64,000 nucleotides of DNA, taken from the IMG/VR virus record IMGVR_UViG_3300049048_000052, positions 1 through 64,000 of that record; one strand, written 5' to 3'. Made by a program: the position numbers and the translations under genes. Below, piece after piece: positions 1-58,043 of the stretch. The notes beneath the pieces are model-generated. The model was not told the DNA's origin. It made no database searches and saw nothing but the letters and a program-made list of their open reading frames with translations. Position 1 is the stretch's first letter, and each line of letters starts with the position of its first letter.

Positions 1-639
1 GAATGGAGCATCACTCGTTGGAGCTGAGGATAGTACTCTCTCGATATTGGGGTTCTGTAGGTTGTTCTTGAAGGTTTGTAAGCTCTTAGGTACATAAGTA
101 ATACCTTCAGCAACACCTTCCCAACGTACAGCAGCAACCCTTCTACCAGGCATAATACCTAGGGAGACAGAGTCAACCTTACAACGCTGCAGTTCATACC
201 TGCCTTGAACCTGAGGGTTCTTGAGACCAGCCTGACCAGTCTGAGCTTGGGTAACAACGTTAGCATTACCGTAGTTAGCAAAGGGAGAGATCTGTCTAGA
301 ACCTAGTCTATACTTTTGGCCTTCGCTCTGAGCATAGTTAGTATCTAGGTCATTAGCATTCGCGTCGAATGCAATCTGAAACCTAGGACCTCGGGTAATC
401 ACCTGGTCCCTGGCAATCCTTCTAAGACCAAAGGTACGCATGACAAAGCTCATATCAACTAAGCCTTGTTCAAGCACCCAGGCAATCTGGATTTCACCGT
501 TTAGATAGATAGGAACTCTTTGTCCTAGTTCCAAGTAGGTTTCCGTAGCATCTCTAATAGAGAGGGTAAGAGACTGGAATCTACCGAAGAAGGCAACGTT
601 ACCCTCAACAGAATCTTGTGCCCATACTTCAAAGTCAAA
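1..639 (-). CDS. Tail tube protein, exon 2 (runs off window start)
   Basis: Not in the ORF track. Open frame of 213 codons, FDFEVWAQDSVEGNVAFFGRFQSLTLSIRDATETYLELGQRVPIYLNGEIQIAWVLEQGLVD.... Joined to exon 1 it gives DPLQG|FDFEVW, the DPxxxFxF start typical of gp19-like tubes. Lies downstream of the sheath gene. Confidence 0.8.
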
Positions 640-877
640 CTAGTTGTTAACGTAGAGGCTCTTTATCCTCTACTTCTCATAGTTTCCTATGAGTCCAGAC
701 TATATCATAGTAACCTAATGGTTACCGCCCCCGCTCGTGCCAACTTATCCTGTTCTAGGTATTGTTGGTAGTCGTTGAACCTTACTCCCATCCCGGAGAG
801 TCTTGGCTGCTGATTGCCATATCTATGTAGACTTAGGGTCCCAGCAGTTCAAGGGCTTTATACAGAGCCTTAACTTA
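640..877 (-). mobile_element. Group I intron (no internal ORF) in tail tube gene
   Basis: Minus strand has P (GAACTGCTGGGA), Q (AATCAGCAGCC), R (GTTCAACGACTA) and S (GATATAGTC) elements in order. Exon 1 ends in U and pairs with the guide GCTCTGTA (U.G at the splice site). The intron ends in G, and its removal restores the frame. Confidence 0.92.
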
Positions 878-937
878 ACCCTGTAGTGGATCGATACCCA
901 CGTTGTTGACCGGAGCCTTATACAGGTCTAAAGCCAT
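878..937 (-). CDS. Tail tube protein, exon 1 (MALDLYKAPVNNVGIDPLQG)
   Basis: ATG at 937 after AAGGAA SD-like sequence; 20 codons, then an in-frame TAA inside the intron. Confidence 0.85.
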
Positions 938-1031
938 TTTAAATGTTCCTTTTAATAAAGTTAACTATTATATACCAGGGGTATTAGGTATTAGTGTAGA
1001 TAGAACTAGACCTATAACTCTAAATCAATAA

Positions 1032-1841
1032 ATGACATATATACAATCTATAACAATAAGGGCATGCCCCTCCTGCAATAGCGAGGATACCGTATTAAAA
1101 GGTAGAACCCCTGATGATAGACAGATCTTTAAATGTAAAGCCTGTGGTAAGAAAACTACTGAGAATAAGAGAGTCAGAGGTAGTAGGGTATTCAATCTAT
1201 CAGAGTTGCTACCCTTACACCTTAAACTTCATACTAACCTGAATAATGGGGAGCTATATAGCTTAGGCGTCTTAATAGCTGATGGGTCTATATCCAAGAC
1301 AGGCCAAATGAGTATAACCCTCCAAGAAAGGGACCAGGATATATTAACTACTATAAGAAAATGTCTGTGTATAGATAACCAGGTTAGGAGTGTGGACTGT
1401 TACTACTCCTATAAAGGAAAGAAGATAACTAAGAGCTATAAGAGATTAACCTGGGCCAATAGATACTCCACTAAATTCTGGGAGTACTTTGGTCTCATAA
1501 ATGGTAAGACTGGTAATGAGCAGTGGTTACCTTATATGAATAACACACACTTTGTTAGAGGCTTTTTAGATGGGGATGGGGGTATGTGTATAAGTAGAGG
1601 GTATATAAGACTATACTTCTCATGCCCCTGCTTAAACTTTATAGGTAAGTTACGTCTATATATAAACGAGCTTATTAAGAATATGGGTAGTATGACCTTC
1701 TCTAAAGGCTGCTATAACCTTCAGTATCATGGTGAGCATGCTTTAAATTTAGCCTCAATCCTTTACAAAGGTAGTGAAGGTATTAGATCAGACCGTAAAT
1801 ATGAAATCTATTATGATTACCTCATAGGTAACTACAAATAA
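1032..1841 (+). CDS. Free-standing LAGLIDADG homing endonuclease with N-terminal Zn ribbon
   Basis: Two LAGLIDADG helices (YSLGVLIADGSI, FVRGFLDGDGGM) plus CPSC..CKAC InsA-like zinc ribbon. Confidence 0.88.
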   Translation: MTYIQSITIRACPSCNSEDTVLKGRTPDDRQIFKCKACGKKTTENKRVRGSRVFNLSELLPLHLKLHTNLNNGELYSLGVLIADGSISKTGQMSITLQERDQDILTTIRKCLCIDNQVRSVDCYYSYKGKKITKSYKRLTWANRYSTKFWEYFGLINGKTGNEQWLPYMNNTHFVRGFLDGDGGMCISRGYIRLYFSCPCLNFIGKLRLYINELIKNMGSMTFSKGCYNLQYHGEHALNLASILYKGSEGIRSDRKYEIYYDYLIGNYK

Positions 1842-1866
1842 AAAAGAGGGTCCATATGGACCCTCT
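1840..1866 (-). terminator. Intrinsic terminator after sheath gene
   Basis: AGAGGGTCC-ATAT-GGACCCTCT followed by a T run on the minus strand. Confidence 0.75.
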
Positions 1867-1888
1867 GTCTGATTAACTTAGTTAAGGA

Positions 1889-4384
1889 CTAGTCCCCGAT
1901 CTGTATACCGCCAGTACTATTACGTACTAGGGTGATATAGATATAATCTGCAGCATATACAGGTAGGAAGCTAATTTGCACATTCAGTCTACCTGCTAGG
2001 TAATCTTCCTGCGTATTGTTAGAACTATCAATAACAGCAGGTAGGTAATTGGCCAGCTGACCGCCTCTAGTTAGAGAGCTTAGATAAGCATTGATAGAGG
2101 TAGCAATCTGAGACCTTAGCAAGGGAGTATTGGTCTCACTCTTATATTGCTGTAGGTTCTGGAATAAGTCCTGACGGATCAGGTCATATATTCTTCTAAT
2201 AGCCACCTTCTCAAAAGCGGTACCTGAGGATAACGTTCTACCGTTAATAAAGTAGAAGCCAGCCTGAGTTTGATCAAGGGCAAGGATTTCTAGTCTTGCA
2301 TCCGTATACAGTTGGAGGCTCGCCTTAGAGTTAAAGCGGGTATCTACTTCAAATATAGACTGGACAGGACCTGCAGTGGTTCTAGCATTGGGACCTACTT
2401 GTACAGGTATAACTGCTAGCTTACCTGCGTATAGACCATCAGGGGCCATACCAAATCTAGTAGCGTTAACCTGACCTGCATAGGTAGACCAACCTGTAAT
2501 CATAACACCTCTCTTAGAGTCAAAGCCAGAGGTTTCTTGTCTAGCTACATTAGGTGACAATCCAGGTCTTGTATTAGTAATAGCAATCCTTAGACCTTCT
2601 AGTTCATGGGACTTATCTGCCTGATTTATAAGTCTCTGCTTGACAGCCCTAGACTTATACTGACCTGCAGCTAGTATGATATGAACTGGATACTCAGCCA
2701 TAGTGTCTATAGCTTTAATGTAATCAGCATCAGTAATATCTGGACCGTCAAATCCATTCTCAAGAGTTATCTCTCTTAGGTAATCAGGGCCGTAGTAGTT
2801 AGGATGTGCTGGATCTGTGGGATCCGTAATAGTGGTGTCAGGAGGCGCTATCCTTTGGGGCGAGCTGTATAGTAACTGAGCATTATAACCATCAGGGTTA
2901 AAGTACTTAGGTACAAATACGCCTCTTATTAGAACTGAAGTAGATAAAGCATTAATGAAACCATTTTCATCAATGGCCCTATCCTCAGCTAAATCTATAA
3001 CATAGTTCTCAGGTAGTTGAGCAGGGTTATACTTATCCCCATTAGTATCCTCAACAGTTAGACTGAAAGAGCTAGCAGTTAAAGGATATACACTAACCTT
3101 TAATGAGTTACCCCAACCTCCTACAGAGGCTGCGGCTAACCTAAGAATAGGTAGACCGTTCATATTATAGAACTCTCTAAAGGCAGTTCTAGGGCCATCC
3201 TCACCACCACTCATAAAAGTAGTGTTAGCGGATGTGAATGAGGTAACCGATAGACCTGAAGAATTAGAGAAACTGAATGTAGCTGTACCAGAGCCTGCGC
3301 CGCTATCAAGGGACTTATTAAGGGTGATAACCCCAGTGCTAGTATTAACAGACTGCACTAAAGTATTACTCTGTAGAACACCACTAATGTTAGTGGTTAC
3401 AATAGCACCTGGGCTAATGTAACCTGCATTACTAGTAGGTGTAACGGTTATAGTGGTAGTAGAATTAGAGTAGTTATAAGAAGCACTAGAGCCCACGGCC
3501 CCATCAGGAACCTGAAGCTCAAAGTAATATGAGAAGTTGTTACCAGCATTACCTACATAGGCTTCCTCAAGATAGAAGCTTATCCCAGTGTCGTCATCCC
3601 TTCTCACAATATCACCAAAGGGTGAATTGCCTGATAGAGTATTCATTAAGGCGGTACTAACTTGGCTAGTGGTAGCGTCCTTAAATATAGGCGTTTGGAA
3701 CAAGAAGCTCTGTACCCTAACGGACCACTCTTGATTTAACACTAAGGCTATATCAGATGTTTGTGTGATAGTACCGAAGATCAAGGATATACCCTGGGAT
3801 ATAGCCTTAGCCACACCCTTATCCGTGGATAAGCCTACACTAATAGAAGTGCTGACCGCAGACCAATCAATATTGGGATCTCCAAAGACATCAGGAATGT
3901 CTAGCAAGCTAATAAACTGATACTTAACAGTAGCAGTAGTAGAGTTTATAGCGGTAACCTTGAAGTAGTATCTACCTGCATCAGTACCAGTATAGCTGCC
4001 TGTGGTAAATATAGGGGTTTTAAGTACTGTACCGTATCTTGGGTAGGCCTGGCCAACATACTTGACATTGGTGGTTAGGTTGTTAGGCTTAGAGGCGACA
4101 CCTGCAAATACAACGGAGCCAAAAGCTTCCTTGGCTAAGCCCATAACTCTGACTATGCCAAAGTCTACTGCACCTTGATCAAAGGCTGCTTGGACTGCCA
4201 TGGATCCCTTAGCTAGATCGCTACCGAATCTATGGGCAAAATCCATAAAGTCGTTTACATAGTTGAATTGGTTAGCGGGCCCCTTAGTGAATTCTCCCAC
4301 CACCCCAATCCTATTCCTAAGTCCGAACCTGATTGGGTTGGTTCCGACATTCTGTTCGTTAAATATGATATCGGGGATTAACAT
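1889..4384 (-). CDS. Tail sheath protein
   Basis: N-terminal GVVGEFTKGP..DF..RFG and C-terminal IRRIYD..NTPLLR..IDSSNNT.ED..GRLNVQI sheath signatures. Confidence 0.93.
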   Translation of the reverse strand: MLIPDIIFNEQNVGTNPIRFGLRNRIGVVGEFTKGPANQFNYVNDFMDFAHRFGSDLAKGSMAVQAAFDQGAVDFGIVRVMGLAKEAFGSVVFAGVASKPNNLTTNVKYVGQAYPRYGTVLKTPIFTTGSYTGTDAGRYYFKVTAINSTTATVKYQFISLLDIPDVFGDPNIDWSAVSTSISVGLSTDKGVAKAISQGISLIFGTITQTSDIALVLNQEWSVRVQSFLFQTPIFKDATTSQVSTALMNTLSGNSPFGDIVRRDDDTGISFYLEEAYVGNAGNNFSYYFELQVPDGAVGSSASYNYSNSTTTITVTPTSNAGYISPGAIVTTNISGVLQSNTLVQSVNTSTGVITLNKSLDSGAGSGTATFSFSNSSGLSVTSFTSANTTFMSGGEDGPRTAFREFYNMNGLPILRLAAASVGGWGNSLKVSVYPLTASSFSLTVEDTNGDKYNPAQLPENYVIDLAEDRAIDENGFINALSTSVLIRGVFVPKYFNPDGYNAQLLYSSPQRIAPPDTTITDPTDPAHPNYYGPDYLREITLENGFDGPDITDADYIKAIDTMAEYPVHIILAAGQYKSRAVKQRLINQADKSHELEGLRIAITNTRPGLSPNVARQETSGFDSKRGVMITGWSTYAGQVNATRFGMAPDGLYAGKLAVIPVQVGPNARTTAGPVQSIFEVDTRFNSKASLQLYTDARLEILALDQTQAGFYFINGRTLSSGTAFEKVAIRRIYDLIRQDLFQNLQQYKSETNTPLLRSQIATSINAYLSSLTRGGQLANYLPAVIDSSNNTQEDYLAGRLNVQISFLPVYAADYIYITLVRNSTGGIQIGD

Positions 4385-4401
4385 TATTTCTCCGTAATTA
4401 C

Positions 4402-5121
4402 TTATTCATTAATGGTCAGGTTGGCTTCTATGTTGGTGACAGGAACATCAAACCTATCCCTCCAACCTCTACTGATATACCCATCTAGCCTTACCAGTAG
4501 CTCAGCCTCGTGGAAGTAGACATTCTTGTCCTTCTCCCATCTACCAGCTTTTAGGTTGGCATATAGGGCCTCAAAGGAGTTGCAGCGTATGGGCATAAAT
4601 CTCTTATAGACAGGATCGCTAACAACTAGTCTTAGTATCTCCAGATACTCGCCTAGTATGTTCACTGATGGATTAATGATTAATGGTACCTCTTTTCTTG
4701 CGTTGGATGTAAGCAAGACTTGTGAGTAATCAAGAGGGGCCTCGGCCCAAGTACTGACAGTTTTACCATCATCTACAGGTACCATAACACTATTATGCTG
4801 TAATCCTATGACTATGTTATAGACAACATGGTCCTCATTACGAGTCTGTCCTATATTGTAAACCTCATACATAGCACTGACCCTATTGGTACCAGGAGCT
4901 AAGGGGGCGCCATCTGAGGAGTAGTATCCAAAGACAGAACATAGAAGACCCTCATCAAAGTAAAGGCCTGGGAATGTCTTATACCTATCTATAAACACTT
5001 GTTCCCCAGTCTCTGGATGGTAGACTGGGGGGTTAATAATAAGAGGGTGGTTAGCTATATAATCAACCAATGCCCTACAGAGATAGGGTATGGACGGAAC
5101 TGGAGGTCCTATGTCTACCAA
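4402..5121 (-). CDS. Probable tail terminator/completion protein
   Basis: Position directly before sheath; size; no motif recognised. Confidence 0.45.
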   Translation of the reverse strand: MVDIGPPVPSIPYLCRALVDYIANHPLIINPPVYHPETGEQVFIDRYKTFPGLYFDEGLLCSVFGYYSSDGAPLAPGTNRVSAMYEVYNIGQTRNEDHVVYNIVIGLQHNSVMVPVDDGKTVSTWAEAPLDYSQVLLTSNARKEVPLIINPSVNILGEYLEILRLVVSDPVYKRFMPIRCNSFEALYANLKAGRWEKDKNVYFHEAELLVRLDGYISRGWRDRFDVPVTNIEANLTINE

Positions 5122-7196
5122 GGGGGTATCCTCCTCTTCTCTATAGTATTAAGGAAGTCCATCTTGTCATAAACATGTTGCAGTCCCGATGACTTCTTAT
5201 GTTTAGTTAAGGAGGCACTACCACTGAACTTAGTTAATAGTTCCTCAGTCTGGTCCGTAGGAGATTGAGTAGTAGTCCTGGCCACCTTAGCATCCACCGA
5301 TACCGATCTGGGCTTATTCTTATAGGGAGTCTTCTCTTCTATGGGGGTGCCAGTGGCTATCTCTAAACCAGCAGGTACTTGGGTAATATCTACTACCACC
5401 CTCACTTCCTCTTTAGTAGTCTGGAATGCGACTATCTCTACAGCATGAGGATAAACAAGGACACCTAAGGTATCACTAGCCTGACTTACTGTATACAAAG
5501 AGTTAAGGAATGCTAAGGCTACGTCCTCAGCAGAGGCATCAACTAGATCTATACTCCAAGGTGCAACCACTGTCGAATTACTAGAGGATACCCTAGCACT
5601 AAGAGTGCCTGTTACAGGTGCTCCTGTAAGTCTAAAGTAGAAGGTGTTAGGGATAGGTATATCCTTCTCCTTAACTGCAGGATCTGTAGTAGATCCTGAG
5701 CCAACCCTACTACCTGTTGTAGTCTTAACAGTACCCTTCTCTACCCCTATGATTAAAGAGTGAGGACCCCTCCTATCTAAGAAGGTATAGTTAGGTAATA
5801 GACCATATAAAATACCATCCACATAATCCTTACTAGTCGGTAGGGACCTATAGTTAATCAAGTCATTATGACTGTTATATAGAACCTTCCATACTGTGTT
5901 ATTAGTGTAGGGATTGGCGCCGCCAGAACTAACCGTATTAGCACAATAATAATCTAGGCCATCATAGGTAACTATAGATTTAGCTGCATAGGAGGTAGCT
6001 GAGCTCCATATACCCTGATAGCTACTACCCGTTGTATTAAATCTGCTATTAGCTATGGCAGTCTTACTAACAGTAAAGAATCTAACTATTATTAGCTCTG
6101 TACTGATAATGGCTGACATCCTCCTAGCATCAAAACGCAGGGAGCATAAGTTGGTCAGCATTCTGAAGCTAGCTACCTTCTTATCGTAGATACCTGTAGG
6201 ATCTGAACTATCAGAATCATACAGCTTCCTCTTAATCATAGAGATAGATGTTAAGCTAGTCGGCTCCACGTTAGGAGAGACTAATACATTAGAGTCATAA
6301 AATGTGACAGCCTCGTTAAGGGCATCTGAGAGGAGCTCTATGATGTCCTCAGCAGTTGAACCATCAGGTATACCGAAGGCTCCCTCAACAGGCTGCAGAA
6401 GCTCACTGGAACCTATCTGTGTGGATATATTAGTGGTGCTACCTGTAACTATAGTGTTAGTGGTGTCTAGTGTATTAGTAGTACTGGTAGTAGCCTTAAA
6501 TCCTCCCTCATCTGCATGGGTAACATAATACCAACAGAGAGCTATCTCACTGGGATCTATATTAAGACTATCTAATAACTTAACGTTAGAGTTAGGGTAT
6601 ACCTCCTCAATCCTAACTATTTGATCAGGAGGATTCAAATTAAAGTATGTAGCTGGTAAGCTAGTGGAGTCTATACCCAAGGATATATATAAGGTGGAGG
6701 CACTAGTACCACCTGCACTCAGTATAGCGGCAGCAGGCGCCTTGGTTTGTGTATATAACTTAGTTATCTCTGCTAAGTCATTAAGTGCTCCCTCTTCTAT
6801 CTGTTTAGCTGAGGTGACATTCTTAATATCATCGTCTAATGGTATAGATCTAATAAGTATAGCTGCGGTGAGTGCTGCCGCCACCCTAGTGATACCTTCA
6901 GAGAAAGGACTATCAGTTGATATCATCAACGTGATAACCCTCTGGTATAGGGCTACTATATCCGTAGGGTTAGTAGGATCTGAAAATAGATATGTGTTAT
7001 CCAGGTTCTTAGCCGCAGAAAGAATCAAGCCTATCCTAGGATAGGCTTGAGTTTGTGCTGTATTTATTATCTGGAGGTCCTTTGATGCTCTTAGTAGAAC
7101 ACTATAGGACCTAACCATATCAATGAAATCAGCCTGCTGCGCCTGGAGGAAGCTCTTAATATCAGGATTACTGCTGAACCCTCCAAAGCTATTCAT
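5115..7196 (-). CDS. Neck/head-tail adaptor-like protein with a carbohydrate-binding-like module
   Basis: N-terminal region resembles Mu gp36-like adaptors (ITRVAAALTAAILI..KQIEEGALNDLAEI). Internal WSSATSYAAKSIVTYDGLDYYC..NP..W resembles CBM5/12. Confidence 0.5.
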   Translation of the reverse strand: MNSFGGFSSNPDIKSFLQAQQADFIDMVRSYSVLLRASKDLQIINTAQTQAYPRIGLILSAAKNLDNTYLFSDPTNPTDIVALYQRVITLMISTDSPFSEGITRVAAALTAAILIRSIPLDDDIKNVTSAKQIEEGALNDLAEITKLYTQTKAPAAAILSAGGTSASTLYISLGIDSTSLPATYFNLNPPDQIVRIEEVYPNSNVKLLDSLNIDPSEIALCWYYVTHADEGGFKATTSTTNTLDTTNTIVTGSTTNISTQIGSSELLQPVEGAFGIPDGSTAEDIIELLSDALNEAVTFYDSNVLVSPNVEPTSLTSISMIKRKLYDSDSSDPTGIYDKKVASFRMLTNLCSLRFDARRMSAIISTELIIVRFFTVSKTAIANSRFNTTGSSYQGIWSSATSYAAKSIVTYDGLDYYCANTVSSGGANPYTNNTVWKVLYNSHNDLINYRSLPTSKDYVDGILYGLLPNYTFLDRRGPHSLIIGVEKGTVKTTTGSRVGSGSTTDPAVKEKDIPIPNTFYFRLTGAPVTGTLSARVSSSNSTVVAPWSIDLVDASAEDVALAFLNSLYTVSQASDTLGVLVYPHAVEIVAFQTTKEEVRVVVDITQVPAGLEIATGTPIEEKTPYKNKPRSVSVDAKVARTTTQSPTDQTEELLTKFSGSASLTKHKKSSGLQHVYDKMDFLNTIEKRRIPPW

Positions 7197-50857: not shown

Positions 50858-50929
50858 ACAGGATTAGTTCAGTGTTAGCAGAACATCCCCTCTAAAGGGA
50901 CAAGATAGGTTCAATTCCTATGTTCTGTT
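50858..50929 (+). tRNA. tRNA with CUA (amber) anticodon, atypical
   Basis: TCCC-CTCTAAA-GGGA anticodon arm (4 bp), ATAGG-TTCAATT-CCTAT T arm; D loop lacks GG. Confidence 0.65.
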
Positions 50930-51519: not shown

Positions 51520-51591
51520 GCAGATATAGCTCAAAGGTAGAGCATATGGACGTTTGTTCATAAGATGTAGGTTCGACCCCTACTATCTGCT
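51520..51591 (+). tRNA. tRNA-like gene with 8-nt anticodon loop (Asn GTT-derived?)
   Basis: GCAGATA/TATCTGC acceptor, GCTC-AAAGGTA-GAGC D arm, loop ACGTTTGT, GTAGG-TTCGACC-CCTAC T arm. Confidence 0.7.
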
Positions 51592-57970: not shown

Positions 57971-58043
57971 CCAAGGTTGGCCGAGCGGTTGAGGCAGCAA
58001 ACTCATAATTTGCCCTAGGCAGGTTCAACTCCTGCACCTTGGA
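57971..58043 (+). tRNA. tRNA-CAU (Ile2 or Met), canonical
   Basis: CCAAGGT/ACCTTGG, GCAAA-CTCATAA-TTTGC, GCAGG-TTCAACT-CCTGC; no encoded CCA. Confidence 0.92.

What the first reader, a model, noticed from the sequence alone, without database searches (positions are those of the whole stretch)
640..1841. ORF-less intron beside an antisense free-standing LAGLIDADG nuclease: candidate collaborative homing pair
Seen: the endonuclease lies about 150 nt from the intron, outside it and on the opposite strand, between the sheath terminator and tube start. Established: collaborative homing between an ORF-less intron and a neighbouring free-standing nuclease is known (cyanophage S-PM2 psbA intron with F-CphI). 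Inference: this Zn-ribbon-LAGLIDADG cuts the intron-less tube allele and the intron confers immunity, which would be a structural-gene, LAGLIDADG version.
Basis: partly seen in the sequence, partly recalled or inferred. Interest (0 to 1): 0.65.

Follow-up and report, generated by a model that had tools for sequence, protein, structure and literature searches.

The report
Intron and nuclease travel together
A large soil phage related to Microcystis phage Ma-LMM01 has a self-splicing intron without a gene of its own in its tail-tube gene, next to a separate DNA-cutting enzyme gene, and related phages show that the two belong to one fast-changing mobile block, a rare kind of partnership between selfish elements.

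Summary
Window 640-877 (minus strand) is a 238-nt ORF-less group I intron. It has a canonical P1 with a U.G pair, a P10 and a terminal G, and it splits the tail-tube gene after 20 codons plus one base. Window 1032-1841 (plus strand) encodes a 269-aa zinc-ribbon plus single-chain LAGLIDADG endonuclease. It lies antisense, outside the intron, between the sheath terminator and the tube start.

The collaborative-homing reading is partly supported.
- In 15 related phage contigs the nuclease always sits in this slot.
- 13 of those 15 have at least one interruption in the tube gene: 12 within the first 29 codons and one at about codon 63.
- None of 17 nuclease-free relatives has an interruption.
- Two phages with 97% identical flanks carry nucleases only 39% identical and wholly different intron sets. 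Their similarity breaks exactly at an intron site in tube.

Points against or still open:
- Two relatives have the nuclease with an uninterrupted tube gene.
- One relative has, at the same site, an intron with its own endonuclease.
- The intron sites differ among relatives.
- Nuclease carriers need only one or two gains on the sheath tree.
- Cleavage specificity and immunity are untested.

The relatives also carry 35-56-nt inserts that keep only the guide sequence and terminal G of a group I intron. They may be core-less mini-introns.

The parts
1..639 (-). Tail-tube gene, exon 2. It covers 213 codons. Its 3' end is cut off by the start of the virus record.
   Evidence: It is in frame with exon 1. 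It matches PHROG 34837 at 1.2e-72. It is 58% identical to Ma-LMM01 gp092, the gene directly after the sheath gene. The nearest ESM Atlas clusters are tail-tube families such as Phi812_tail_tube, T4 gp19 and Hcp; this is a lead only. The closest relative, L112, runs about 13 codons further.
640..877 (-). ORF-less group I intron of 238 nt.
   Evidence: Rfam RF00028 scores 71.8 bits. P1 is 8 bp with a U.G pair at the splice site, P10 is 8 bp, and the last base is G. In an alignment with 11 related tube-gene introns, 34 of 49 predicted pairs show compensatory changes. It is 77.5% identical to the L112 intron at the same site, while third codon positions of the exon are only 46% identical.
878..937 (-). 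Tail-tube gene, exon 1 (20 codons, ATG at 937..935).
   Evidence: Translation. It is 85% identical to the first 20 residues of the uninterrupted L003 tube gene.
938..1031 (.). 94-nt spacer between the divergent tube and nuclease starts.
   Evidence: Sequence. One sigma-70-like site lies on the minus strand at 964..936. This is fewer sites than the shuffled sequences gave, so it is not evidence of a promoter.
1032..1841 (+). Free-standing homing-endonuclease gene. The N-terminal zinc ribbon spans about residues 10-43 and the single-chain double-LAGLIDADG core spans about residues 70-265.
   Evidence: It is a single copy in the 251,780-bp genome.
1845..1866 (-). Intrinsic terminator hairpin of the sheath gene. 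It also closes the nuclease gene from the other side.
   Evidence: 9-bp stem, 6 G-C pairs, T-run on the minus strand.
1889..4384 (-). Tail-sheath gene (831 aa), the upstream neighbour.
   Evidence: Pfam Phage_sheath_1C at 1.3e-9. PHROG 30392 'tail sheath' at 1.3e-162.

Best explanation
The intron and the nuclease gene are two parts of one mobile, fast-changing block that sits between the sheath gene and about codon 30 of the tail-tube gene.

Proposed mechanism, all inferred: during mixed infection the zinc-ribbon LAGLIDADG enzyme makes a double-strand break in the conserved first 30 or so codons of tube in a phage that lacks the block or carries another version. Repair from the carrier's DNA then copies the nuclease gene together with the adjoining, interrupted 5' end of tube. 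The ORF-less intron is spread in this way without a nuclease gene of its own (trans or collaborative homing). The interruption of the coding sequence keeps the carrier's own tube gene from being recognised and cut.

Shown here: the intron is a structurally intact group I ribozyme with correct splice-site pairings; the protein has a LAGLIDADG endonuclease fold with both catalytic acids; the two are linked in relatives; the block is exchanged as a unit.

Inferred: where the enzyme cuts, that the intron blocks cutting, and that homing still occurs.
For: 1. Intron and nuclease are verified.
2. The nuclease family has 21 close homologues. Every one of the 15 loci with context has it antisense between sheath and tube.
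3. 13 of 15 carriers have one to five interruptions in tube: 12 within the first 29 codons and one (L158) at codon 63. None of 17 non-carriers has any. Fisher p is 3e-7, or 7e-5 after collapsing close relatives.
4. L146 and L148 are 99% (sheath) and 98% (tube) identical in protein and 97% in flanking DNA, yet their nucleases are 39% identical and their intron sets differ completely. DNA similarity stops exactly at the 3' splice site of the L146 intron, at tube codon 28, and resumes downstream of the nuclease gene, about 130 nt before the sheath stop. This is the shape expected of a conversion tract running from a break in the 5' end of tube across the nuclease gene.
5. Intron-free relatives carry near-cognate junction sequences.
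6. Precedents exist. F-CphI and the S-PM2 psbA intron (PMC6083498), T3/T7-like phages (PMC3984707, bioRxiv 10.1101/2023.03.23.533998) and T4 mobE with the I-TevIII intron (PMC2790892) are cases of trans or collaborative homing. The T4 gene 60 insert shields the phage from MobA (bioRxiv 10.1101/2022.08.31.505936).
Against: - L003 and L156 have the nuclease and an uninterrupted tube gene, so an intron is not required for self-immunity.
- L116 has, at the same site as the window, a different intron with its own LAGLIDADG_2 gene.
- Intron sites in relatives span codons 4 to 29, plus codon 63. That is wider than one 20-22-bp LAGLIDADG site, and nuclease type does not map one-to-one onto intron site.
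- On the sheath tree the carriers form one clade plus the window in an unresolved polytomy, so the association could rest on one or two gains.
- The window's intron looks old and vertically inherited: 77.5% identity to the L112 intron while synonymous sites are saturated.
- The intron's tail motif occurs in more than 115 other viral contigs, so this is a generalist phage intron family.
- No RNA data and no intron-free allele were found in public runs.
Confidence: 0.55

Rival explanations
1. Hitch-hiking only. The nuclease is an ordinary free-standing homing endonuclease whose target lies elsewhere, for example at the sheath-tube junction that its own insertion splits, or at a tube sequence that carriers have changed by substitution. 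The introns give no immunity. They pile up beside it only because DNA next to a homing endonuclease is copied along with it and recombines often.
For: Two carriers have no interruption at all. Intron sites are scattered over codons 4-29 and 63 and do not track nuclease type cleanly. Co-conversion of flanking markers is a general property of homing (PMC3984707). Nuclease genes mark the boundaries of exchange in other phages (bioRxiv 10.1101/2023.03.23.533998).
Against: The L146/L148 exchange leaves the whole sheath gene untouched but reaches into the first 18 to 28 codons of tube. Up to five interruptions, including 35-56-nt inserts, are packed into 27 codons in L142 and L146. That is hard to explain without selection for breaking up this stretch.
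Confidence: 0.25
2. Nuclease turnover. The intron once carried its own endonuclease gene, as the L116 intron at the same site still does, and lost it. The free-standing nuclease arrived separately and has no working relation to the intron.
For: L116 has an 843-nt intron at exactly the window's site with a LAGLIDADG_2 ORF. This alternative has been proposed for such loci (bioRxiv 10.1101/2023.03.23.533998).
Against: The window and L116 introns share only the guide region that must match the common exons, not the core. The window's intron belongs instead to the ORF-less family found at six other sites of this gene. The two LAGLIDADG proteins are unrelated at profile level.
Confidence: 0.08
3. 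The protein is a maturase-like splicing helper for the tube introns rather than, or as well as, a nuclease.
For: The second-ranked and the fourth- and sixth-ranked structural matches are LAGLIDADG maturases, bI3 and I-AniI. Carriers nearly always have introns.
Against: Both catalytic acids are invariant in 25 homologues. L003 and L156 keep an intact gene without any intron. The gene is antisense to, and outside, the transcript it would have to help.
Confidence: 0.05

Closest known systems
Cyanophage S-PM2 psbA intron with F-CphI (collaborative homing; Zeng et al. 2009, as described in PMC6083498 and PMC3984707)
   Same: [quoted passage not shown] In both cases the phage is a cyanophage or a relative of one.
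   Different: F-CphI uses an Endo VII-type catalytic motif, whereas this enzyme is a zinc-ribbon LAGLIDADG. The host gene here is a virion structural gene and the nuclease gene is antisense. For S-PM2, cleavage at the intron site and protection by the intron were shown experimentally. Here neither is tested.
[quoted passage not shown]
   Same: The nuclease gene lies outside the intron and beside it, and the arrangement was called collaborative homing.
   Different: The host gene and phage group differ. Those systems show no multi-site intron hot spot.
T4 mobE and the nrdB intron with defunct I-TevIII (trans homing, PMC2790892)
   Same: A free-standing nuclease mobilises a neighbouring intron that cannot move itself, through co-conversion.
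   Different: mobE is an HNH enzyme. The T4 intron still holds a dead endonuclease gene, whereas the window's intron has no ORF at all.
T4 MobA and the 50-nt gene 60 bypass insert (bioRxiv 10.1101/2022.08.31.505936)
   Same: A short non-coding insert in an essential gene next to a free-standing endonuclease protects the carrier from that enzyme, and the two move as one cassette. This is the best analogue for the 35-56-nt inserts in the relatives.
   Different: The gene 60 insert is skipped by the ribosome using matched take-off and landing codons. The inserts here lack matched codons and instead have group I splice-site features.
Intron-encoded LAGLIDADG enzymes of Twort-like Staphylococcus phages (for example I-MsaII)
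   Same: These are the closest named sequence relatives of the nuclease core: about 28% identity over residues 76-260.
   Different: They are encoded inside introns and, over the matched region, show no counterpart of the N-terminal zinc ribbon. The window's enzyme is free-standing.

Membership tests
Group I intron (Rfam RF00028) | Score at or above the curated cut-off of the covariance model | tested here: met
   71.8 bits against a cut-off of 50, E 2.9e-16.
Group I intron (Rfam RF00028) | 5' exon ends in U paired with G in P1; the guide sequence also pairs with the 3' exon (P10); the last intron base is G | tested here: met
   P1 is 8 bp, P10 is 8 bp and directly adjacent, and the intron ends in G. 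Removing the intron restores the conserved reading frame.
Group I intron (Rfam RF00028) | Conserved core helices kept by compensatory changes | tested here: met
   34 of 49 predicted pairs have changes on both sides in 12 related tube introns. P7 switches between two fully complementary versions (read by eye).
Group I intron (Rfam RF00028) | Self-splicing with guanosine in vitro, or spliced mRNA in vivo | not testable with these tools
   No RNA run holds the window.
LAGLIDADG homing endonuclease | Two LAGLIDADG helices, each with a conserved acidic residue | tested here: met
   D84 and D182 are invariant or nearly so in 25 homologues.
LAGLIDADG homing endonuclease | Curated Pfam cut-off reached | tested here: not met
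   The window protein scores 17.5 bits on LAGLIDADG_3 against a cut-off of 22.5. Its homologues at 34-44% identity pass with 23.6-47.9 bits.
LAGLIDADG homing endonuclease | Alpha-beta-beta-alpha-beta-beta-alpha double-domain fold | tested here: met
   The model has pLDDT 92.8. Foldseek probability is 1.00 to I-Tsp061I, I-AniI, I-WcaI and the I-OnuI family.
LAGLIDADG homing endonuclease | Site-specific DNA cleavage | not testable with these tools
   Needs an enzyme assay.
Collaborative (trans) homing pair | The intron has no endonuclease ORF, and a free-standing endonuclease gene lies beside the interrupted gene | tested here: met
   The gap between them is 154 nt.
Collaborative (trans) homing pair | The enzyme cuts the intron-free allele at or near the intron insertion site | not testable with these tools
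   The only indirect evidence is that the exchange boundary in L146/L148 lies at an intron site in tube.
Collaborative (trans) homing pair | The intron prevents cleavage of the carrier's own gene | not testable with these tools
   Two carriers without any interruption (L003, L156) show it cannot be the only route to immunity.
Collaborative (trans) homing pair | Intron and nuclease are inherited together | tested here: inconclusive
   13 of 15 against 0 of 17, and a cassette swap was seen. However, one or two gains suffice on the sheath tree, and the intron sites vary.
Phage tail tube protein | Recognisable tube family or fold | tested here: inconclusive
   There is no Pfam hit, and the PHROG match has unknown function. 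The AlphaFold model of exon 2 failed, with pLDDT 35. The PDB profile search gave nothing. The assignment rests on the gene's position right after the sheath gene and on Atlas neighbours from tube families.

The most novel reading that the evidence does not exclude
In related phages the same stretch of the tube gene carries 35-56-nt inserts that are core-less group I mini-introns. There are 11 instances in 7 loci, and up to three per gene. Each follows a U and ends in G. Each holds a guide sequence whose two adjacent halves pair with the upstream and downstream exons. Removing each one restores the conserved reading frame. None has a catalytic core. The proposed reading is that they are spliced by the core of a full-length intron of the same family, which lies downstream in the same transcript (directly after the next short exon, 18-25 nt, in L004, L114 and L149, and further downstream in the others). 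They would persist because each break in the DNA shields the gene from one of a diversifying set of neighbouring LAGLIDADG nucleases. That would be an arms race written into the first 30 codons of a structural gene.
Probability: 0.45. Interest if true: 0.9.

Novelty: new variant of a known kind. Interest (0 to 1): 0.68.

Why it matters
Collaborative or trans homing is the favoured route by which mobile introns are thought to arise, but it rests on very few cases. The cases met in the papers read here involve Endo VII-type, HNH-type and T5orf172-type enzymes.

This locus adds a LAGLIDADG example in a virion structural gene. More usefully, it comes with a natural series of at least 15 related cassettes in which nuclease type and intron pattern vary on similar backbones. 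That makes two questions directly testable with a handful of synthetic substrates: does each nuclease cut where the introns sit, and does each interruption protect?

If the short inserts in the relatives are indeed spliced by a neighbour's catalytic core, they would be, as far as I know, the first natural non-autonomous group I introns. They would be the RNA counterpart of miniature transposons. They would also be a natural case of excision by a ribozyme acting on a separate substrate helix, which so far is known from engineered ribozymes (PMC2532722, PMC4094466).

Tried and rejected
- **Phage collection, DNA search:** a megablast of window 1-6000 against the phage collection found nothing.
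- **Nuclease relatives in viral contigs:** the single nuclease sequence found no relatives. An alignment found only the two already known.
- **Public sequencing runs:** two soil metagenome DNA runs hold the window and no RNA run does. Laying their contigs showed no intron-free or nuclease-free allele. Splicing and expression therefore could not be checked.
- **L116 intron ORF:** it is not related to the free-standing enzyme (hhalign probability 0.4). I therefore dropped the idea that the free-standing gene had moved into the intron.
- **Ribosome hop:** I considered a gene-60-like hop for the short inserts. I rejected it because no insert has a landing codon matching its take-off codon directly before the resumed frame (read).
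- **One long intron:** I considered a single intron spanning all short exons in L146. I think it unlikely because the short exons keep the most conserved residues of the protein through synonymous changes.
- **Tube fold:** the AlphaFold model of tube exon 2 was useless, with pLDDT 35. The PDB profile search gave nothing.
- **Intron motifs:** the two intron motifs I searched are generic to phage group I introns, with more than 95 and more than 115 contigs. They say nothing specific about this locus.
- **Spliced protein not searched:** I did not search or fold the joined tube protein.
- I redid it with coordinates only.
- **Large profile search:** the search over protein representatives was not used.

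Full report
**What the window is.** The window is the first 64 kb of a 251,780-bp virus record from IMG/VR. Public runs place it in soil metagenomes. Its tail genes are distant relatives of those of Microcystis phage Ma-LMM01 (Fukuivirus) and of a Microcoleus phage. The structural genes near the start of the window are on the minus strand.
- The tail-sheath gene is at 4384..1889.
- The homologue of Ma-LMM01 gp092 follows it, as it does in Ma-LMM01.
- I call that second gene the tube gene because of its position and because its nearest ESM Atlas clusters are tail-tube families.
- No curated family or solved structure confirms the tube assignment.

**The observation.** It is correct at the stated coordinates.

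The intron:
- Rfam's group I model matches 676-968 on the minus strand at 71.8 bits.
- The exact intron is 877..640, 238 nt.
- Exon 1 (937..878, 20 codons) ends in a U that pairs with G at the end of an 8-bp P1.
- The 8 bases directly 5' of that guide pair with the start of exon 2 (P10), and the intron ends in G.
- Exon 2 (639..1) continues the frame. Both exons align with the uninterrupted tube gene of relative L003.
- The intron has no ORF on its own strand.
- An alignment with eleven related introns from the same gene in other phages shows compensatory changes in 34 of 49 predicted pairs, so this is a working ribozyme family.
- Against its closest relative, L112, the intron is 77.5% identical while third codon positions of the exon are 46% identical. 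It is therefore old in this lineage and under constraint.

The nuclease:
- The ORF at 1032-1841 on the plus strand encodes 269 residues with a four-cysteine zinc ribbon followed by two LAGLIDADG motifs.
- The two catalytic acids, D84 and D182, are conserved in 25 homologues.
- The window protein itself misses Pfam's cut-off (17.5 against 22.5 bits), but its homologues pass it.
- It matches PHROG 4645 at 1.4e-20. Its core is about 28% identical to the intron-encoded enzymes of Twort-like Staphylococcus phages.
- A confident model (pLDDT 92.8) matches solved LAGLIDADG enzymes and maturases.
- The gene is a single copy in the genome.
- It starts 154 nt from the intron, outside it and antisense. 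It ends at a hairpin that is a strong terminator for the sheath gene on the other strand.

**Relatives.** In Ma-LMM01 and 16 other distinct relatives the sheath stop is followed within about 4 to 230 nt by an uninterrupted tube gene. These relatives have no nuclease and no intron.

The nuclease family has 21 close members in the large protein collection. I could see the surroundings of 15 loci, counting the window. In all 15 the gene lies antisense between sheath and tube.

Using L003 codon numbers, the tube genes of these 15 loci read as follows.

| Locus | Interruptions in the tube gene |
|---|---|
| Window | One intron after codon 20 plus one base |
| L116 | An unrelated 843-nt intron at the same site, with its own LAGLIDADG_2 ORF |
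| L003, L156 | None |
| L143, L148 | One intron after codon 4 |
| L115 | Introns after codons 4 and 27 |
| L114 | A 36-nt insert after codon 8 and an intron after codon 14 |
| L004, L149 | An intron after codon 4, a 52-56-nt insert after codon 20 plus two bases, and an intron after codon 29 |
| L141, L154 | An intron after codon 4, a 37-43-nt insert after codon 8, and an intron after codon 29 |
| L146 | Three short inserts (after codons 8, 14 and 20 plus two bases) and an intron after codon 27 |
| L142 | The same four as L146, plus an intron after codon 4, and two tandem nuclease genes |
| L158 | One intron at codon 63 |

So 13 of 15 carriers are interrupted against 0 of 17 non-carriers. Fisher p is 3e-7, or 7e-5 after collapsing close relatives. 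No intron was seen without the nuclease, but the contigs L112, L126 and L127 are too short to tell.

**How far the association can be trusted.**
- On a sheath tree the carriers form one fully supported clade of nine. The window sits apart in an unresolved polytomy. One or two gains of the nuclease suffice, so the raw count overstates independence.
- The stronger evidence lies inside that clade. L146 and L148 have 99% identical sheath and 98% identical tube proteins and 97% identical flanking DNA. Their nucleases are only 39% identical and their interruptions share no site.
- DNA similarity ends exactly at the 3' splice site of the L146 intron after codon 27. It resumes downstream of the nuclease gene, about 130 nt before the sheath stop. 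A short 91%-identical stretch lies at the nucleases' 3' ends.
- The exchanged unit is therefore the nuclease gene plus the first 18 to 28 codons of tube with their introns. The sheath gene is untouched.
- This asymmetry is what a break in the 5' end of tube, repaired across the nuclease gene, would leave. It is an inference, not a demonstration.

**Most likely mechanism.** I take the intron and nuclease to be parts of one mobile block. The nuclease provides the break and the ride. The interruption protects the carrier. The established parallels are:
- F-CphI with the S-PM2 psbA intron (PMC6083498);
- T3/T7-like phages (PMC3984707; bioRxiv 10.1101/2023.03.23.533998);
- T4 mobE with the nrdB intron (PMC2790892);
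- T4 MobA with the gene 60 insert, which protects against MobA (bioRxiv 10.1101/2022.08.31.505936).

Intron-free relatives have junction sequences close to the window's, so targets exist. My confidence is 0.55 that the two are functionally linked in this way. It is lower, about 0.35, for the exact claim that this enzyme cuts at the junction and that the intron is what protects.

The evidence against is real:
- two carriers have no interruption;
- one carrier's intron at the same site has its own nuclease;
- the sites are spread over more DNA than one LAGLIDADG site covers;
- nuclease types do not map cleanly onto sites;
- the intron family is a generalist in phages.

The main rival (0.25) is plain hitch-hiking beside a nuclease that cuts elsewhere. 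Nuclease turnover (0.08) and a maturase role (0.05) are less likely, for the reasons given under the rival explanations.

**The short inserts.** Eleven inserts of 35-56 nt lie in seven related loci, none in the window. They all share these features:
- each follows a U and ends in G;
- each contains stop codons or shifts the frame;
- removing each one restores the conserved protein sequence;
- in each, a 6-8-bp complement to the upstream exon, ending in a U.G pair, is directly preceded by a 4-8-bp complement to the downstream exon. This is the order found in the guide sequence of group I introns.

In nine of the eleven, the automatic scan found this arrangement and shuffled inserts reached both pairings in 0 to 5 of 3000 trials. 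In the other two (L114, with one mismatch in P1, and L146 site F, where the scan picked a different site) the shuffle figures were 16 and 184 of 3000, and I found the pairing by eye.

The pairings co-vary. At the site after codon 8, L141's guide and its downstream exon both differ from those of L114 and L154 in a way that keeps the pairing. In L004 and L149 a second helix, between the insert's 3' part and the following short exon, is kept through a matched change.

The inserts have no catalytic core. Every locus that has them also has a full-length intron of the Rfam-recognised family further downstream in the same gene. I therefore propose that they are non-autonomous mini-introns served by a neighbour's core. 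Engineered ribozymes do comparable reactions (PMC2532722, PMC4094466). I did not find a natural precedent, but I did not run a literature search aimed at one. This rests on sequence only, and I put it at 0.45.

**Limits.**
- No RNA evidence exists for splicing or for expression of the nuclease.
- The window's own sub-lineage is poorly sampled.
- The tube assignment is by position and weak similarity.
- The spliced protein was not searched as a joined sequence. The exons were used separately by reference.

**Verdict.** For the window itself this is a new variant of a known kind. The relatives hold something that may be new in kind.

Noticed in passing
Related loci, none in the window: L114:3704-3739:+; L141:2794-2836:-; L154:2234-2270:-; L146:3289-3330:-, 3221-3270:-, 3166-3200:-; L142:268-309:-, 202-249:-, 146-181:-; L004:2798-2849:+; L149:2828-2883:-: Eleven 35-56-nt inserts lie in the tube gene. 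Each has group I splice-site features: a U before it, a G at its end, and adjacent P10 and P1 guide pairings. None has a catalytic core, and they are separated by exons of 18-63 nt. They may be core-less mini-introns spliced by a neighbouring intron.
   Followed up: partly
L004:2489-2747:+, L143:3092-3357:-, L148:3096-3364:-, L141:2849-3167:-, L142:322-591:-: A second kind of intron sits after tube codon 4. It shares its first 25 or so bases and its last 30 or so bases with the Rfam-type introns at that site, but its middle differs and Rfam does not recognise it (no match at E up to 1 in L004). It is structured: 23 of 58 predicted pairs show compensatory changes.
   Followed up: partly
G000:C1 outside the window: 164510-164742 (+), 179772-180031 (+), about 120479-121155 (+), 130487-130728 (+): The genome has four more group I intron matches. 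One is in a thyX-like gene and one in a dUTPase-like gene, each with a sense HNH_3 ORF just upstream. A third match, when scanned with looser filters, spans a 677-nt stretch that takes in an antisense HNH ORF. The fourth has an antisense ORF of unknown family ending at its 5' edge, with a PD-(D/E)XK endonuclease gene and a tRNA close by.
   Followed up: partly
L149:4286-4942, L151:1050-1874, L156:1834-3095, L146:4297-5176, L004:1326-1568, L114:1654-2772: In many relatives one to six small genes lie between the nuclease gene and the sheath gene, on the nuclease's strand. Most encode 58-93 aa, with one of 108 aa in L114. The ten I aligned are very divergent but share a short motif (S/V)-(I/L)-Y-x-P-F. 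They have no Pfam match. The window has none.
   Followed up: partly
L142:749-2363: Two LAGLIDADG nuclease genes stand in tandem, 39% identical to each other. They lie next to the most fragmented tube gene seen, with five interruptions.
   Followed up: no
L141 (tube strand, about 4442-4453 of the reverse complement) and L115:3348-3359: The 12-nt first exon of tube seems to begin with ATA or ATC instead of ATG in these two loci. This could be an unusual start codon or a further unseen exon.
   Followed up: no
L006/L120 (5158-5772 and after 6869) and L010/L134 (6725-7339): Nuclease-free relatives carry extra diverged copies of the tube-like gene, before or after the main one.
   Followed up: no
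Window 1 and the far end of G000:C1 (about 251,700-251,780): The record starts inside the tube gene, about 13 codons short of its end by comparison with L112. A terminator-like hairpin for the minus strand lies at the very end of the record. The genome is probably circularly permuted or cut at this point, and a few bases may be missing.
   Followed up: partly
Window 50858-50929, 51520-51591, 57971-58043: Three tRNA genes lie on the plus strand.
   Followed up: no
L149:3501-4127: The nuclease gene call here is only 208 aa and starts after the zinc ribbon. The upstream DNA still resembles the missing part (the tblastn match begins at residue 23). The gene may be damaged at its 5' end or have been miscalled.
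   Followed up: no
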